Shown here in pieces: positions 13,101 to 64,000 of a DNA stretch of 64,000 nt. Both the position numbers and the translations under genes were made by a program. Below the pieces are notes generated by a model, which was not told where the DNA came from, ran no database searches, and saw nothing but the letters and a program-made list of their open reading frames with translations. Origin of the DNA: Ramazzottius varieornatus (taxonomy: Eukaryota > Animalia > Tardigrada). Position 1 is the first letter of the stretch, and every line of letters starts with the position of its first letter. Location of the stretch: positions 1,725,249 to 1,789,248 of the forward strand of contig BDGG01000005.1 of NCBI GenBank assembly GCA_001949185.1. The letters are read 5' to 3'.

Positions 13101-16100
13101 TCATAGCAAAGCCTTATGAGGCAGAAGGTACATGTCGGCGAACTGGTACTGCAAACTATGCGGAGGCCGGACCAGAACTCTCAGACTACTTTTCTGCCCC
13201 GCGACAGTATCTCTTCCAGAAAGAACTCGTAACAGACCAAGCAAAGAACAATAGCCTACAGACATCTCTTTCCCTCGAATGAACGAGTAGCCACCTTTCA
13301 GCACATAACCGAAGGTCCGTCTATCGGAGGCGTCGACCACCGCCGTAGGGTCAGCCAGAATCTTCTCTACTTGCAACTTCCTTCTCTCCTTTACAGCCAT
13401 CTTCCTGAATGGGTCCTTCTTTGCCGCCTCGACTGGTCCTTTGAATGTCTTGTCAGCTACGAGCTTGGTCAAGTCATCCTCATTCGGGATACAAATGGTA
13501 GAGAAGTCTTGCGAAGTGCCTCCAGCATCGAAAGACACGCAGACCGGAAGAAGACCTTCACGGTGGAGCTGAAGTAACTCTGCACAGTCCACTCTGAACT
13601 TCTCCAGTGTTACGGGACCGTTAAGTAAGCTTTGCAGCTGGAAAAGCAGCTTTAGGTTTCGTACGACATGAAAACCACCAGACTCAAGAGCAGAGTTTGC
13701 GGGAGACTCTTTGGTTGAGGTTTCGTTCAGGGTGACCCATTCGCGAGTGAGGACTTTCCACGGACAGTGGCATGGACTCTGAGAACCCATCTTGATGTAA
13801 TTTGGTCGTTTGTCAGGAGGATATCGTTGGAACTTGGCTTCTTCTACCTTGCGCCCTTCTGCGCATTCGGTGAGACCTGCAGAATACCAAAATTAAAATT
13901 TCGCCCTAAATTTGCACGCGCCTGCGTACTGGGACACCATGATCCTTAGGCGGTATATTATATGTAGGTTCATGAAAGACTGGACATTTTGTTCACCAAG
14001 CTCTTTTACGGTACTGTATTCATAATCCGTATTATTGAAACAAAATCTAGTTCTTCACCCGCAGCAGAATCAGGATAGTCGAAAGGAAACAAAAGACTGG
14101 CTTGGTGCAACGATACAGTCTGTAGTTCACGGAGACCTCCGACGCGAGCGCCGCTGTAAACCAAAGGCACCCAGAAAGACATGGCCCATCCAGCGGGAGC
14201 GATCAAGTCCCAACCTGCTCCGTACTCTGCAAGCCAAACATCATTCTGTAAATCGAGCACTCATGGAAACCATCAACATTAAAAGAACCTGCTATCGTTT
14301 TAGGTTTGACCTTCCGATACATACCTCGTCGCGAGAGGTTCTGGTCGAAGTCGTATCCGCCGTTACGAACCAACAGAATCGGCACCCGTGCCTCACGTTC
14401 ACCCAGATCCAGTTCCGATCCTAAAGAACCACTGTTAAAATAAATTCGAAACTTTACAGCCACGGCGCTCGTCGTGGGAGATGTGCTAAAACAAAACTAT
14501 AACACCCGTGTACAGCTTCATAAGCGACTCTGCGCAGGAATCGAACCTGCTGATCAGTTCATCACCGATCACCATTCAGAGTTGAGCTCGCCATGAAAGC
14601 AAGGCTGTTAAATTCTTGTAAGATTTACGTACTAGCAGAATTATGCCCACCAGTACCTACCTGGAGCAGGAAGCTCTGATCGCAACTTGTTCATCTCGAA
14701 GTCACTCAGCTTTTGCTTATTCATCTGTTGGCGTACGTCTTGATCCCATATGAACGACGCTGCTATCGACGAAGAACGGTCTGGCAATTTTGAGCTTACC
14801 GAAGATTCTTCTGCTGTCTCTGCGAAACGCAAGTGTTTACAAACCTTCCCTATTCTAGACACTAGACATGGGTTACTCGCACTGATCGACAAACAAACTC
14901 GAACAGGTGGTTTTCCCAAGTGGTGCACGTTCCCAGCCGACAGCCGTGAAAACGTGCGCCACTTGGGATCACTATATTTCAAATGATGATGTTCAATTGA
15001 ACACTTACTTGTGTCTTTCTGACCCTCAAGGCTCGTCTTCATCTTTGGGCGGAACAATCTGGGGTCCCGGACCACAAGACCTAGCACACTTCCGGCACGA
15101 ACCTCCAGAAAGGACGGGTTCACAGCCATGTTGTTCCACACATCTCGTTGCTTGTTGGCCAGCTCCAGAGCGCTCTCTTCACCAGCACCAAAGACTCTCA
15201 CCCACCAATACTCCATGTTCCCATGGCCAGTTGGACTAACTAGGTTTGCTGGTTTGAGCACACTCTTCAAGACCTCGGTACTTTTCGGACCAGTCAGACG
15301 AAAGCGGACCAAGTCATCTTTCTTATTTCTCAAAGTAACAGTGCCGGAAGCATACTCTAGACTCTGTACGACTAGTTCAGCCGCCTTCTCTTTTCCCACT
15401 GCGGTCGCACTTGGCAGTTCTTTCATATCAACATCTTCGTCCTCTAGCGTCATGCTGCTCTGTTCTCCGGCAGTTTCGTTAGTCTGAGCGCTTGCTGCTG
15501 CACCACCGGAAGTTACTGCTTTCATCTCGAAAATGCGAAGAAGTTCATCTACCAGTCCCGCACTACAAGACGGGTGAGCCCAAATATGCAACTTCCACTG
15601 GCTGGTATGAGTGTTGGTTTCACCAGTCGGGAACCACGAAAAGCGAACCGGTCCGAGGACTTTATTCGGGTACTGTCCAGTTTCGTACAGCAAGCAGGAA
15701 CCTTCCAGATGTCCGGCCAAGTAGTCATTATAGGCAAATGTGCGACCTGCAAAGAAAAGACAACATAAACATCACTGAAAGAGAACAACAAGAATATGGG
15801 TAATCGACAGTATCGACCGTATCGGTACCGATTTCCGGGGAAGTGAGCGTTTGCAGTCCAGATAGAAGTGCAGCTTGTGGACCTTCCAGTTCGAGACAGA
15901 CCAAGTACGACATGTCCGTCATAAGGCAGTGTTCACTGGAAGCTCGAAATGCAGCTCGGAAGCCTTTGTCGTTGGGATAATGAGCAATTTTACGACCCCA
16001 TTTTGGAATCATGTGGAAGCGCTTGGCGTGCCAAACGTGGGTCTCCAACCAGCCATTTGTCGCACTTCTCCTCGTATACATGGCTTTCTTGTTCCTCCCA

Positions 16101-16709
16101 CGTTTTCGGTACTTGCGCCGAGGACGTTTCGGTGCTTTAGTATTGCTTGTCTGTGTTGAAGAGAAACATACCTGGTTACTTTATAAATGGTTCACGCACG
16201 CTTCAAGTGTTTGATGCTGAGAGCATGCGCCACTTTGAAGAAACCATCGTGTCGGGCTCGGTTCATCTCCATGCGAACACATACCTCTTTGAACGCGACT
16301 GCTCTTAGTCTCTTGGGGAGACGTTTGACATTGTAGCTCATGGCTCGGCGTCGCATATGTCGAGGAAGCTGCTGAAACACTCGTTTGTTGGTCTTTTTCA
16401 AAGCGAGGGAATCAACAAGTGTTCTGATTTCTCGCGATCGCTTCTCGGCAAAGGCAATCACGTTAAGGTCTGTGAAGCAAAAGAGTCTACTTTACCAGGC
16501 TTCAGCCTACATGTGGTACATACACTAATGTACTGATATTCTTGAAACTTACCTTTTGGCGGAGCAGATTGCGCAGCCTCCCGGCTTGTTTCCGGGTGAG
16601 AAGATACCGCAAATCCGTCAGCTGATGCAACAGAGCCGGATGGACTCTGTCGTCGATCTCCAAGGCTTCCGCCATCCCTCTTGCGCTTCCCTCCTCTTGA
16701 CGACTTCAT
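13101..16709 (-). CDS. POP1: Ribonuclease P/MRP protein subunit POP1, multi-exon
   Basis: FQQLPRHMRRRAMSYNVKRLP, WLETHVWHAKRFHM, DMSYLVCLEL, HIWAHPS, GWDLIAPAGWAMSFWVPLVYSGARVGGLRE, FPFDYPDS, C-terminal GYVLKGGYSFIRGK..VLVRPPHSLQY. Confidence 0.95.
14527..14582 (-). ncRNA. tRNA-like structured RNA element (acceptor-like stem + 8-bp hairpin + T-arm, no D-arm) in POP1 intron 14421-14660, sense to POP1
   Basis: Minus strand reads ACUCUGA AUGG UGAUCGGU GAUGA ACUGAUCA GCAGG UUCGAUU CCUGC GCAGAGU; flanks pair further (14515-14600). Confidence 0.65.
14890..14970. repeat. GGCGCAC-N25 palindrome family copy (POP1 intron)
   Basis: tcccaagtggtgcac-N25-gtgcgccacttggga. Confidence 0.85.
16185..16260. 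repeat. Degenerate palindrome family copy (POP1 intron)
   Basis: cacgcacgctt...agcatgcgccactttgaagaaaccatcgtgtcgggctcg. Confidence 0.6.
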
Positions 16710-33191: not shown

Positions 33192-35600
33192 ATGGACGCA
33201 GCTATCCTTCAGAGTTTCGTCTACGAACACCTGCAGAAGTACGGACAAGATCTAGCTGACCTGTACAGAAGGAAGATCGCAGAACATGGTACTTCTTCTT
33301 CACAAAACCACAAGGCTGCTTCGCCAGTCAAGCAGACACCTCAGCTGACAAACGGACGTCCGGCATCTACGGCCAAACTCAACAGCAAACCCGCCGAATC
33401 ATCTAGCGAAGAAGAATCAGAAGATGAACAACCCTTGGCGAAGGCAGCACCGAAGTCTGCACAATCTTCGCCAGCAAAGACAACTTCAGCCCAGTCTTCT
33501 GCCACAAAACCAGCAGCTGCCACCAATCAAGCGAAACCGACGCCAGCCAAGAAACCTGACACTGATACGGATGATACCGACGACGATGAGGATGAGAAGA
33601 AGCCTATCCCAAAAGGTAAGACAGTAAGCAATTATGGAAGCTCGGCAGACAAACTCGACCAGATCGTTTTCTCAAGTGGCGCACGTTTGCAGCCGGTATC
33701 ATTGCAAACGCGCGCCATTTGAGAATATGATCTGGTTGAGTCTGGTTGCACTCATTGTCAGTAATCCGCCATGTTCACCTCGATAACTCTCTTTTCCTCA
33801 AAATTAGCTGCTATTGCTGCTCAGCCCTCCCGTCCGGCACCTGTAGTAGCTCAGAAAGCCGTGATACAGCCGCCGAAGAAGGCTGCCCAGAAAGAAGAGA
33901 CTTCAGAGTCTGAGACAGATACGGATGATGACAAGGCAAAGAAGCCTGCGTCCAAGCCAGTAATATCAGCAGCCGCTCCGGCGGTAAAACCGGCTGTTGC
34001 AACGCCACAAGCCTCTGCAGCTGCAACCAAGAAACCAACAGCCAAGAAGGATGAAACCAGTTCGGAGGAGGACAGTGAAGATGAAAAGCCTAAAGCTGCT
34101 CAGCCAAAGGTTCGATCTTCTTTTTCTCACAGACAACATTTCCGAACCTAATCAGAAGCAAAAACGCTTGAAAAATGGGAGGCTGTTAAAATCAATGAGT
34201 TGATCCAGATCATTCTCAAAAGTTGCGCGCCTTCTCACGGTTACTTACTGAGAGCGCGCGCCACTTGGGAAAAACGATATGCATGGATTCATTTCCCGGC
34301 GTCCAAAAATAATAAGTTGGATAAATTCAAGATGAAATTCATTCTCATGCAAAGGCGATTTCTGTCTTTCAGGCAGCCACGCCAGCGGCAAAGCCAGCTG
34401 CAGCCCCGGTGAAAGTCACCCCAGCAAAGAAGGCGCAAGAATCCAGCGACGAAAGCGACACTGACGAAGATGAACCACCCAAGTCAGCTACAAAGAAGCC
34501 TGAACCAGCCAAGAAGCCCGCCGTCACCACTCCGCTAGCCACGTCCACAAACACCAACACCACTCCCAAGAAAGTAGTCGCTCTTTCAGCCAAGAAGCCC
34601 GAAAGCAGCGAAGAGTCTTCGGACGATGAGAAGCCCAAAGGTAAGGTGGCGGCTGCTCCGGCCAAGCCAGCTGCGGCACCTGCAGCGAAGCCTTCACCGG
34701 TTTCCGCTGCAAAGGCTGCACCGAAGAAGGCTGATACGAGTGATGATGACACGTCGGATGACGAGAGCGCCAAGCCTGAACCTGTGGCCAAGAAACCTAC
34801 TGCTGCTCCGGCGGCGGCTGCGGGTAAGAGAGCCAAGGCTGGGACTAGTAGCGAAGAGGATAGCTCGGAAGATGACAAGAAGAAGCCAGCTATCTTCTCG
34901 GCACAGAAGAAGCAAAAGACGGACAGCCCTGCTGCAGGCGCGAAGCAAAATGGCATTGCTGCTTCGGGTAAGGTGAGTTCGATGTTTAGGTTCAACTCGG
35001 AGGCTTACTAGTCTTTAAAGAAGTCCTTTGAACAAAAAGTTGATCAGCTTCACTGAAAACTTTGTTGAAGGAAATCTTTTCAAGCACCTGCGTACAGTAT
35101 GTAGTGCAAACCATGAAGATTTCTGTATGCAGGTGCAGTAAGATGGCGCAGTTTTCGGCTTGTGTCTTCCAGAGCCGAATGAGTCAGGGTTGGCCGGGGT
35201 TGGTTGTTAGTGCGACTAGTGTTACGATGTTCTTTTAGGGGGCGAAGAAGAAGTAGGGAACGATGAGGCCGAACGGGAAGAAGAATTTGGTGGAGATGAA
35301 GGACAAGAAGAATCAACCGTTGATGTTCCTCAGAAAGAAAAGCGTCGTTCATCTCCTTTTCGCCGTGTCAAATCTAATCTAGATAGCGTTCAATTTGCTG
35401 TATCCGATCATCGTCTTTATGATAATTCTTATAATGCTGCTCGGGAGGGTATGGGGGATGCTGATTGGGGTGACAAGGCTGCCAGCGATTTCCGCACTGT
35501 CAAAGGCAAGAACTTCCGCCATGAAAAGACGAAAAAGAAGCGCGGATCGTATCGTGGTGGAAAGATCACCACTGGCGTCAACTCTATCAAATTCGACTAA
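33192..35600 (+). CDS. NOLC1: Nucleolar and coiled-body phosphoprotein Nopp140 (SRP40 family), multi-exon
   Basis: LisH-like N terminus, alternating acidic-serine and K/A/P repeats, SRP40_C tail SPFRRVK..WGDKAASDF..KGKNFRHEKTKKKRGSYRGGKITTGVNSIKFD. Confidence 0.93.
33648..33745. repeat. Palindrome family copy, near full length (Nopp140 intron)
   Basis: aaactcgaccagatcgttttctcaagtggcgcac-N25-gcgcgccatttgagaatatgatctggttgagtc. Confidence 0.9.
34197..34290. repeat. Palindrome family copy (Nopp140 intron)
   Basis: ccagatcattctcaaaagttgcgcgc...gcgcgccacttgggaaaaacgat. Confidence 0.75.
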
Positions 35601-61796: not shown

Positions 61797-61880
61797 GAGG
61801 TCATTTTGTTCAAATGGCGCACGTTTTCGGTGCTGTTGCATGAAAGTGTGCGCCACTTGGACAACGATCTTGTCGCGCTG
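61797..61880. repeat. Palindrome family copy (RGS upstream region)
   Basis: caaatggcgcac-N25-gtgcgccacttggacaacgatcttgtcg. Confidence 0.8.
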
Positions 61881-63455: not shown

Positions 63456-64000
63456 TTATTTCTTTCCGGTTTTCGACGGACTGGATGAAGATTCGCTGAG
63501 AGATGCGTCAAAGGCTTCGGTCCCTCCACCGTCTTGAACTTGACTTGCTTTCAGAAGGCGGTACAGCGCTACGGCTTCTTTGCTGGTTTGTCTCACGCAA
63601 AAAGCTTGAATTTCAACCAGCAAATCCTGCAAGAAAAAATCACCATTCATACACTATTCAAAATCAAGATGCTAGAAAAAATCTGGAAGCTCTACAACTC
63701 GACTAGATCTTTTTCCAAGTGGCGCAGTTTTCACTGATACTGGCTGGAAGCGTGCGCCACTTGGAAAAAAACGATCTGGTCGAGTTGGTTCGTCGAGCTC
63801 CTGATTGATTTCAATCGAAATTCTATAAAAGTAAACCTGAGCGATAAAACTCTGCGATACTCATACCGGATTTTCAGCAAGGTTCAAAGTCTTGTTTCGG
63901 ACAGCGCTCTGCAGGAAGACGCACACCAGCCGTATCAGCCGGTGATTGTATGCTGATTCGGTTGAAGCGCCACTGTCGCATTTGCGAAGAGCGTAAGAAA
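63456..64000 (-). CDS. CNOT11: CCR4-NOT subunit 11, last two exons (gene continues beyond window)
   Basis: RLIRLVCVFLQSAVRNK | DLLVEIQAFC..KEAVALYRLLK matches the CNOT11 C terminus. Confidence 0.85.
63695..63790. repeat. Palindrome family copy, near full length (CNOT11 intron)
   Basis: aactcgactagatctttttccaagtggcgcag-N24-gtgcgccacttggaaaaaaacgatctggtcgagtt. Confidence 0.9.

What the first reader, a model, noticed from the sequence alone, without database searches (positions are those of the whole stretch)
14515..14600. tRNA mimic inside a POP1 intron: candidate RNase P autoregulatory feedback loop
Seen: the 240-nt POP1 intron (14421-14660, at protein position RSELPAPG|SELDL) carries on the POP1 sense strand ACUCUGA-AUGG-[UGAUCGGU GAUGA ACUGAUCA]-[GCAGG UUCGAUU CCUGC]-GCAGAGU. 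That is a perfect 5-bp T-stem with a canonical 7-nt UUCGAUU T-loop, directly followed by a 7-nt acceptor-like strand (6 of 7 pairs), one 8-bp hairpin replacing the D and anticodon arms, and a single-stranded GG. The flanks pair further (UUCAUGGCGA with UCGCUUAUGAA). There is no D-arm or 7-nt anticodon loop, so it cannot be a working tRNA. Established: RNase P recognises the coaxial acceptor+T stack (~12 bp) and T-loop and cuts minimal tRNA-like substrates such as mascRNA; POP1 is the scaffold protein of RNase P/MRP. From memory, to be verified: a comparative vertebrate RNA-structure screen (EvoFam, Parker et al. 2011) proposed a tRNA-like structure in a POP1 intron as autoregulatory. Inference: RNase P cleaves its own subunit's pre-mRNA just 5' of 14582, competing with splicing and setting holoenzyme level, with the GG mimicking D-loop G18/G19. 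An invertebrate instance would imply an ancient or convergent circuit.
Basis: partly seen in the sequence, partly recalled or inferred. Interest (0 to 1): 0.9.

Follow-up and report, generated by a model that had tools for sequence, protein, structure and literature searches.

The report
tRNA-like minihelix in POP1 intron
An intron of the tardigrade gene for POP1, a core protein of the tRNA-cutting enzyme RNase P, carries a unique 56-base RNA shaped like the part of a tRNA that RNase P recognises, so the enzyme may cut its own subunit's transcript, but no cleavage or conservation data could be obtained.

Summary
On the minus strand, window 14527-14582 has these parts: a 6-of-7 acceptor stem, an AUGG linker, an 8-bp hairpin, and a perfect 5-bp T-stem with loop UUCGAUU that runs straight into the acceptor 3' strand. 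It lies mid-intron (14421-14660) in the sense strand of a confirmed POP1 gene.

It is not a tRNA. It is single-copy in the 55.8-Mb genome, and no tRNA of this genome has a similar 3' half. It does not belong to the abundant palindromic repeat found in two other POP1 introns.

The bare T-loop/B-box motif occurs at chance frequency (115 hits against 103 for a control). The full architecture is expected about 2e-4 times per genome under strict criteria and about 0.1 under loose ones. The core fold persists when the whole intron is folded.

The genome encodes RNase P RNA, Rpp29 and Rpp30. The intron position is ancient, but 13 non-tardigrade POP1 introns at that position show no such element.

The feedback mechanism stays an inference: tardigrade orthologues and RNA reads could not be reached. 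Best reading: an RNase P (and RNase Z) substrate mimic competing with splicing, confidence 0.4. The main rival is an inert tRNA-derived relic.

The parts
13125..16473 (-). POP1 gene (RNase P/MRP subunit), coding part seen in the window
   Evidence: Pfam finds POP1_N (E 1.8e-17 and 1.6e-20) and POP1_C (E 3.1e-28). tblastn with P0008, named by NCBI as Paramacrobiotus metropolitanus POP1-like, covers exons from 16473 down to 13125.
14661..14819 (-). Exon upstream of the intron, ending ...RSELPAPG (first base of the Gly codon)
   Evidence: A further intron, 14820-15008, bounds it on the 5' side.
14421..14660 (-). 240-nt phase-1 intron (GTAGGT...TTTAG) hosting the element
   Evidence: Sequence. P0008 aligns contiguously at residue 492 on both sides. 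The same intron position is seen in many POP1 loci from metagenomes.
14576..14582 (-). Acceptor-like 5' strand ACUCUGA. The predicted RNase P cut lies between 14583 and 14582.
   Evidence: The first six bases pair with 14527-14532, all Watson-Crick. A14576 faces G14533 as a mismatch.
14572..14575 (-). Single-stranded linker AUGG
   Evidence: Unpaired in the MFE and centroid folds.
14551..14571 (-). 8-bp hairpin with 5-nt loop GAUGA, standing where the D and anticodon arms would be
   Evidence: Folded with the four linker bases as a 25-mer it gives dG -9.2 kcal/mol. Only 0.7% of random 25-mers from the window fold as well.
14534..14550 (-). T-arm: 5 Watson-Crick pairs GCAGG/CCUGC around loop UUCGAUU (G53, U54, U55, C56, G57, A58, C61 all canonical). 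At DNA level it is a perfect B-box, GGTTCGATTCC.
   Evidence: It is the only B-box match in the window. Within one mismatch, the 17-mer occurs at only one other place in the genome, and that place is not a tRNA.
14526..14533 (-). Acceptor-like 3' strand GCAGAGU (14533-14527) directly abutting the T-stem, plus discriminator-like C (14526). The predicted RNase Z cut follows 14526.
14329..14420 (-). Exon downstream of the intron (..SELDLGEREARVPILLVRNGG..)
   Evidence: tblastn.

Best explanation
The element is a selected tRNA mimic reduced to the module that tRNA end-processing enzymes read. That module is a 7-layer acceptor stem stacked on a 5-bp T-stem, a canonical T-loop and an unpaired junction. 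One hairpin stands in for the D and anticodon arms.

It is transcribed as part of the POP1 pre-mRNA. It would fold in the middle of the intron, 78 nt after the 5' splice site and 105 nt before the 3' splice site. Nuclear RNase P would cut between 14583 and 14582. RNase Z could cut after 14526.

A cut made before splicing severs the pre-mRNA and costs one POP1 mRNA. POP1 output would then fall when free RNase P capacity is high and rise when the enzyme is scarce or busy with pre-tRNA. That is a negative feedback on a shared RNase P/MRP subunit.

Shown: the sequence, the fold, its uniqueness, the host gene and strand, and that the genome encodes an RNA-based RNase P. Inferred: cleavage, its timing relative to splicing, and any effect on POP1 level.
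For: - The architecture is exactly as described, and it survives folding of the whole intron in both MFE and centroid structures.
- The T-arm is canonical at every universally conserved position, and the acceptor 3' strand abuts it with no spacer, as in tRNA.
- It is single-copy. BLAST of 106 nt finds only itself. A covariance model of the element finds only itself in 55.8 Mb, at 103 bits. blastn and nhmmer of the intron against the window find only itself.
- No parent tRNA is visible. No tRNA in the genome comes within one mismatch at the 18 specified positions of the 3' half, and the sites at two mismatches that I checked are not tRNAs. The best of 16 distinct tRNA sequences sampled shares 16 of 24 bases, which is essentially the shared T-loop and the stem pairs next to it. 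The 24-mer has no exact match in prokaryotic genomes or viral contigs.
- I inspected 97 of the 115 B-box sites. Apart from 23 ARAGORN tRNAs, only five have a 5-bp T-stem. Two are intron-bearing tRNAs, two are tRNA-like fragments, and the fifth is this element.
- The strict chance expectation is about 2e-4 per genome, before asking that it lie in the sense strand of an RNase P subunit intron.
- A long-decayed relic should have lost acceptor and T-arm pairs as fast as the middle of the molecule. Here 11 of 12 stack layers and the whole T-loop are intact while the middle is unrecognisable.
- The genome encodes RNase P RNA (137.8 bits), Rpp30 and Rpp29.
- From established knowledge: human RNase P cleaves model substrates made of acceptor stem, T stem-loop and a bulge (Yuan and Altman 1995, cited as reference 65 in PMC12390755). 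RNase P cuts the tRNA-like mascRNA out of MALAT1.
Against: - There is no evidence of cleavage, of a small RNA product or of any effect on POP1.
- Conservation is untested. The orthologous introns of other tardigrades could not be fetched.
- Thirteen POP1 introns at the same position from other eukaryotes carry no tRNA-like element. Rfam on seven of those loci is also blank. The circuit, if real, is not general.
- The thermodynamic z-scores are modest: -1.88 locally and -1.40 for the whole intron.
- The bare B-box is at chance frequency in this genome.
- The first pair is A1-U72 and position 7:66 is an A/G mismatch, both unusual for tRNA.
- tRNA-like fragments do exist elsewhere in the genome (L117 and L139).
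- Cleavage of an already excised intron would have no regulatory effect.
- The vertebrate precedent rests on memory only.
Confidence: 0.4

Rival explanations
1. It is an inert relic. An old tRNA gene or tRNA-derived fragment landed in the intron, lost its D and anticodon arms by deletion and drift, and keeps its T-arm and acceptor pairing by luck. RNase P may or may not nick it, with no consequence for POP1.
For: tRNA-like fragments without a full cloverleaf exist elsewhere in this genome (L117 and L139). Every perfect T-stem around a B-box that I inspected was a tRNA or tRNA-derived, so a tRNA origin is plausible. No conservation data argue for selection.
Against: No parent tRNA with a similar 3' half or T-arm exists in the genome, so the insertion cannot be recent. 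If it is old, neutral decay should not spare 11 of 12 stack layers and all conserved T-loop bases while erasing the rest. With only a few relics per 55.8 Mb, a landing in the sense strand of this 240-nt intron has odds of the order of 1e-5. No CCA or A-tail follows the 3' end.
Confidence: 0.25
2. The intron hosts a small tRNA-like RNA. RNase P and RNase Z release a ~57-nt RNA from the spliced-out or nascent intron, as with mascRNA. That RNA has its own role, or is simply degraded, and POP1 level is not controlled by it.
For: The structural evidence is the same as for the best explanation. The mid-intron position leaves both splice sites free. mascRNA and menRNA are the precedent.
Against: It does not explain why the host is an RNase P subunit gene. 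There are no paralogous copies elsewhere. No small-RNA data are available.
Confidence: 0.15
3. It is a chance occurrence. A random B-box-like 11-mer happens to have flanks that pair.
For: The 11-mer is at chance frequency (115 against 103). Under loose criteria about 0.1 such elements are expected per genome. The scan reads very many windows. The z-scores are modest.
Against: Under criteria as strict as the observed features, the expectation is about 2e-4 per genome. The further requirement of a sense-strand RNase P subunit intron adds roughly 1e-5 to 1e-4.
Confidence: 0.1
4. It works at the DNA level. The perfect B-box is an extra-TFIIIC (ETC-like) site inside POP1 that couples POP1 transcription to the Pol III machinery, and the RNA fold is incidental.
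For: The B-box match GGTTCGATTCC is perfect. From memory, yeast ETC6 lets TFIIIC regulate TFC6.
Against: About 90 other non-tRNA B-boxes exist at chance level. There is no A-box by my reading. This reading does not explain the acceptor pairing that abuts the T-stem, or the hairpin.
Confidence: 0.05

Closest known systems
mascRNA/menRNA tRNA-like elements at the 3' ends of MALAT1 and NEAT1 (MEN-beta)
   Same: A tRNA-like fold embedded in a Pol II transcript. It is recognised by RNase P, which cuts just 5' of the acceptor stem. RNase Z can release a ~60-nt RNA.
   Different: mascRNA keeps a full cloverleaf, sits at the end of a lncRNA and serves 3'-end formation. This element lacks D and anticodon arms and sits inside an intron of a protein-coding gene. 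It gave no Rfam match of any kind at gathering score. No mascRNA-type family appears among the eight weak matches at E<=10.
Minimal model substrates of human RNase P (acceptor stem + T stem-loop + bulge; Yuan and Altman 1995)
   Same: The same three parts are present: a 12-layer coaxial stack, a 7-nt T-loop, and an unpaired or inserted segment between the acceptor 5' strand and the T-stem.
   Different: Those are synthetic substrates. This is a natural element with a 25-nt insertion, and its cleavage is untested.
tRNA-like structures predicted in a vertebrate POP1 intron (EvoFam screen, Parker et al. 2011)
   Same: The same host gene and the same proposed logic: RNase P acting on its own subunit's pre-mRNA.
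   Different: It is known to me from memory only. The paper was not retrievable, so intron position and structure could not be compared. No paper in the searched library mentions a POP1 intron element, and to my knowledge it has not been tested experimentally.
Microprocessor (Drosha-DGCR8) autoregulation by cleaving hairpins in DGCR8 mRNA
   Same: An RNA-processing enzyme cleaves a mimic of its normal substrate in the transcript of one of its own subunits, which gives homeostasis.
   Different: The enzyme and the mimic differ. The DGCR8 hairpins lie in the 5'UTR and coding sequence, not in an intron. That loop is proven and this one is not. (From established knowledge.)
Human RNase P/MRP level control through RPP14 exon 2 splicing (PMC13408128)
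   Same: It shows that RNase P/MRP abundance is set post-transcriptionally, at the pre-mRNA of a protein subunit.
   Different: That control acts through the splicing factors TRNAU1AP and PRPF39 on RPP14. It does not involve a tRNA mimic or POP1.

Membership tests
tRNA gene (Rfam RF00005 / cloverleaf) | Four-arm cloverleaf with a D-arm and a 7-nt anticodon loop, detected by tRNA finders | tested here: not met
   ARAGORN finds no tRNA in the window, yet it finds the genome's real tRNAs. Rfam has nothing at gathering score. The best weak hit is tRNA-Sec, 17 bits against a cut-off of 47, E 0.76. Only one hairpin, with a 5-nt loop, lies between the acceptor strand and the T-arm.
tRNA gene (Rfam RF00005 / cloverleaf) | Canonical T-arm (G53-C61, U54, U55, C56, R57, A58) directly followed by a 7-nt acceptor 3' strand | tested here: met
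   GCAGG-UUCGAUU-CCUGC is followed at once by GCAGAGU. Six of seven acceptor pairs form.
tRNA-derived SINE or other repeat family | Multiple related copies in the genome | tested here: not met
   BLAST finds one copy. The T-arm 17-mer within one mismatch occurs at two sites. Covariance model R1 finds only itself. The intron matches only itself in the window.
Abundant palindromic intron repeat of this genome (earlier finding s1-789690) | Paired inverted motif AAGTGGCGCACGTT / AACGTGCGCCACTT | tested here: not met
   The motif occurs 32 times in the window against 5.4 expected. It is present in two other POP1 introns (14918-14964 and 16222-16235) and absent from 14421-14660.
RNase P substrate (tRNA-like minihelix class) | Coaxial acceptor + T-stem stack of 12 layers ending in a 7-nt T-loop | tested here: met
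   6 Watson-Crick pairs plus one A/G layer, then 5 Watson-Crick pairs, with no intervening base on the 3' strand.
RNase P substrate (tRNA-like minihelix class) | Unpaired junction or bulge after the acceptor 5' strand, and an accessible 5' leader | tested here: met
   The AAUGG junction is unpaired. Four leader bases are unpaired in the full-intron MFE and centroid folds. In the local 106-nt fold a six-base leader stretch is unpaired, although bases further out pair with the trailer.
RNase P substrate (tRNA-like minihelix class) | Actual endonucleolytic cleavage at the -1/+1 junction | not testable with these tools
Box C/D snoRNA (intron-hosted) | C box near the 5' end and D box (CUGA) near the 3' end, joined by a terminal stem, with a guide region between | tested here: not met
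   UGAUGA and CUGA lie only 2 nt apart inside the 8-bp hairpin. There is no distal D box. Rfam snoRNA hits are at E 2-10, far below their cut-offs.
Conserved autoregulatory element of POP1 across animals | Presence in the orthologous intron of other species | tested here: inconclusive
   The intron position is shared by many metagenomic POP1 loci, and none of 13 such introns holds a tRNA-like element. Rfam on seven of those loci is blank. None of the loci looks like a tardigrade, so close relatives were not tested.

The most novel reading that the evidence does not exclude
A tardigrade sets its RNase P/MRP level through a minimal tRNA mimic in the POP1 pre-mRNA, which RNase P itself cleaves in competition with splicing. 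This would be the first invertebrate case of a loop proposed only computationally in vertebrates, and it would have arisen independently. The element is a natural 'acceptor + T-arm + one hairpin' substrate smaller than mascRNA.
Probability: 0.35. Interest if true: 0.85.

Novelty: new variant of a known kind. Interest (0 to 1): 0.62.

Why it matters
[quoted passage not shown] A splicing-based control through RPP14 was described in human cells only in 2026 (PMC13408128).

A substrate mimic inside the pre-mRNA of the shared scaffold protein POP1 would be a direct sensor of spare RNase P capacity. The logic is the same as Drosha cleaving DGCR8 mRNA. It would also add a natural minimal substrate to the short list of non-tRNA targets of nuclear RNase P.

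The hypothesis is sharp and cheap to test. It names one cleavage site, one 57-nt product and a handful of point mutations. If comparative data show the element is not kept in other tardigrades, it becomes an ordinary relic and the interest falls sharply.

Tried and rejected
- **Orthologous DNA.** I could not fetch the contigs encoding the tardigrade-like exon proteins P0001 (ENA) and P0002 (JGI), or the Paramacrobiotus gene for P0008.
- **Metagenome scans.** A scan with the conserved exon 14045-14227 found nothing. A second scan with an alignment of ten full-length POP1 proteins gave 70 loci, none recognisably tardigrade. In these loci ARAGORN (run on 60 of them), model R1, a T-arm-plus-acceptor descriptor and Rfam (seven loci) found no tRNA-like element in the orthologous intron.
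- **Literature.** The EvoFam paper is not held under DOI, PMC id or PubMed id. No held paper combines EvoFam with POP1 or mentions a POP1 intron.
- **Rejected readings.**
  - tRNA gene.
  - SINE or MITE copy.
  - Member of the palindromic intron repeat.
  - Box C/D snoRNA.
  - Recent copy of a resident tRNA.
  - Foreign tRNA fragment.
  - Extended flank helix as part of the element.
- **Other RNase P genes.** Rpp30 and Rpp29 have no B-box nearby among the 100 listed sites.
- **Rules kept.** No spliced, joined protein model was used in any search. Exons were searched one by one, by reference.
Full report
**What is there.**
- On the minus strand, window 14582-14526 reads ACUCUGA-AUGG-UGAUCGGU-GAUGA-ACUGAUCA-GCAGG-UUCGAUU-CCUGC-GCAGAGU-C.
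- When the whole intron plus flanks (280 nt) is folded, the core appears unchanged in both the MFE and the centroid structure. The core is a 6-bp acceptor stem, an 8-bp hairpin and a 5-bp T-arm.
- The opposite strand folds worse.
It is also not unusual: 9% of random sites have an equally good flank duplex.

**Host gene.**
- Pfam finds POP1_N in 16195-16461 and 15731-16081, and POP1_C in 13104-13790, all on the minus strand.
- A protein-representative search with the last exon returned P0008. NCBI names it POP1-like of the tardigrade Paramacrobiotus metropolitanus.
- tblastn of P0008 against the window lays out the exons. The 14421-14660 interval falls exactly between P0008 residue 492 on one side and 492 on the other, so no coding sequence is missing.
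- The intron is GT..AG and phase 1. The element starts 78 nt after the 5' splice site and ends 105 nt before the 3' splice site.
- The assembly has 55.8 Mb in 200 contigs. From memory these figures fit Ramazzottius varieornatus, but I did not test that.

**Not a tRNA, not a repeat.**
- ARAGORN finds no tRNA in the window, although it finds the genome's real tRNAs.
- Rfam has no match at gathering score. With permissive settings the best match is tRNA-Sec at 17 bits, E 0.76, aligned only through the acceptor and T-arm.
- The 106-nt region is single-copy by BLAST in the whole genome.
- The 17-nt T-arm, within one mismatch, occurs at one other site, which is not a tRNA.
- A covariance model built from the element with its structure finds only the element itself in the genome, at 103 bits.
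- An earlier finding of this scan (s1-789690) reports an abundant palindromic repeat in introns of this genome, so I tested that rival.
  - Inverted repeats sharing the motif AAGTGGCGCACGTT are indeed common in the window: 32 matches against 5.4 expected.
  - They sit in two other POP1 introns (14918-14964 and 16222-16235).
  - The 240-nt intron has none, and it matches nothing else in the window by blastn or nhmmer.

**No parent tRNA.**
- I searched the B-box plus acceptor 3' strand with the three variable stem positions on each side left free.
  - No site in the genome comes within one mismatch.
  - The sites at two mismatches hold no tRNA.
- The best of 16 distinct tRNA sequences sampled shares 16 of 24 bases with the 3' half. 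The shared bases are essentially the T-loop and the stem pairs next to it.
- The 24-mer has no exact match in 185,579 prokaryotic genomes or in the viral contig collection.
- No CCA or A-rich tail follows the element.

**More than chance?**
- The 11-mer GGTTCGANTCC by itself is not. It occurs 115 times in the genome against 103 for the reversed control. One match per 64 kb is seen in 16% of shuffles.
- I used every position of the window, on both strands, as a mock anchor. The conditional probabilities were:
  - three further Watson-Crick T-stem pairs: 0.017;
  - six contiguous Watson-Crick acceptor pairs abutting the T-stem, gap 10-60: 0.016;
  - a 25-mer hairpin at least as stable as the observed one: 0.007.
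- Together that is about 2e-6 per B-box, or about 2e-4 per genome. With G-U pairs allowed, any 6-of-7 acceptor pairing and my rough assumption of 0.05 for a well-folded spacer, the expectation rises to roughly 0.1 per genome.
- Empirically, I fetched 97 of the 115 B-box sites.
  - 23 are ARAGORN tRNAs.
  - Of the other 74, only five have a 5-bp T-stem. Two are intron-bearing tRNAs that ARAGORN missed (L153, L164). Two are tRNA-like fragments (L117, L139). The fifth is the POP1 element.
- None of these figures yet includes the requirement that the element lie in the sense strand of an intron of an RNase P subunit gene.

**Is the enzyme there?** The genome has a nuclear RNase P RNA (RF00009, 137.8 bits), Rpp30 and Rpp29, besides POP1. 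Neither Rpp30 nor Rpp29 lies next to a listed B-box.

**Comparative evidence.** This is the weak point.
I could get neither tardigrade orthologues nor RNA reads.
- A metagenome scan with the conserved neighbouring exon found nothing.
- A second scan, with an alignment of ten POP1 proteins, gave 70 POP1 loci from assorted eukaryotes.
- In these loci the intron position at P0008 residue ~492 recurs: L009, L013/14, L016, L017, L021, L022, L024, L027, L030, L035, L055 and L056-58. The intron position is therefore old.
- None of these introns shows a tRNA, a match to model R1 or a T-arm-plus-acceptor structure on the sense strand. Rfam on seven of the loci gave no match at E<=1.
- The element is therefore not a general feature of POP1 genes. 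Whether it is shared among tardigrades is unknown.

**Literature.**
- The EvoFam paper could not be opened.
- No paper in the library links EvoFam with POP1 or mentions a POP1 intron element.
That is memory, not a check.
- RNase P cleavage of tRNA-like structures in Pol II transcripts (MALAT1/mascRNA) is well documented.
- A 2026 paper shows that human RNase P/MRP abundance is set at the splicing of RPP14. Post-transcriptional control of a subunit is therefore a real theme, though by another route.

**Reading.**
- The element has the features that RNase P and RNase Z read, and little else. The T-arm is flawless, 11 of 12 stack layers are standard pairs, and the junction is unpaired.
- The part of a tRNA that these enzymes do not need has been replaced by one tight hairpin.
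- A recent tRNA copy is excluded by the lack of a parent.
- An old neutral relic should not have kept just this module.
- Pure chance is unlikely at the strict level.
- I therefore favour a selected substrate mimic, cut by RNase P between 14583 and 14582 and possibly by RNase Z after 14526. Cleavage would compete with splicing of the POP1 pre-mRNA, giving negative feedback on RNase P/MRP assembly.
- Every step after 'it folds like this' is inference. I put this at 0.4. The rivals are an inert relic (0.25), a processed small RNA without feedback (0.15), chance (0.1) and a DNA-level TFIIIC site (0.05).

Noticed in passing
window 14820-15008 (minus strand): The 359-aa ORF 14641-15720 reads straight through a likely intron (GTAAGT...TTTCGCAG, 189 nt = 63 codons, no stop). 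Tardigrade POP1 homologues have a gap there. The interval holds a copy of the palindromic repeat (14914-14968). ORF-based gene models would wrongly add 63 residues.
   Followed up: partly
window, whole; e.g. 149-195, 14918-14964, 33674-33720, 61812-61858, 63717-63762: There is an abundant inverted-repeat family with core AAGTGGCGCACGTT / AACGTGCGCCACTT. It gives 32 matches in 64 kb against 5.4 expected. It is probably the palindromic intron repeat of earlier finding s1-789690.
   Followed up: partly
L009, L013, L016, L017, L021, L022, L024, L027, L030, L035, L055, L056 (positions): The phase-1 intron at the ..VPG|S.. junction at the start of the POPLD region (P0008 residue ~492) is shared by POP1 genes of many unrelated eukaryotes from metagenomes. 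Its length there ranges from 47 nt to 2.1 kb. It is an old intron position.
   Followed up: partly
G000:C1:7733182-7733492 (L105:1501-1811, +): This is the nuclear RNase P RNA gene (137.8 bits). It has TATAAAAG about 35 nt upstream and a T6 run about 30 nt downstream. No long ORF lies on its strand nearby. It looks like a free-standing Pol III-type gene rather than an intron-hosted one as reported for insects.
   Followed up: partly
G000:C4:3595258-3595508 (L153) and G000:C7:2026451-2026701 (L164): Two long-arm tRNA genes (Leu/Ser type) with apparent introns and T-run terminators. ARAGORN did not call them.
   Followed up: no
G000:C2:8635467-8635717 (L139) and G000:C1:6080445-6080695 (L117): Two tRNA-like fragments with perfect T-arms but no full cloverleaf. 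L139 abuts a run of N. They show that the genome holds a few tRNA-derived relics.
   Followed up: no
L031:1475-1547 (minus strand of a metagenome POP1 locus): A tRNA-derived-looking piece (D-arm-like TAGCTCAATTGATTAGAGC plus T-arm ATGGG-TTCGAAC-TCCAT). It lies antisense to, and upstream of, the matched part of a non-tardigrade POP1 gene. ARAGORN does not call it.
   Followed up: no
own genome, whole: The canonical B-box GGTTCGANTCC is no commoner than its reversed control (115 against 103). Only 23 of the 97 sites inspected lie in ARAGORN-called tRNAs, plus two intron-bearing tRNAs it missed. This compact genome therefore carries essentially no tRNA-derived SINE load.
   Followed up: yes
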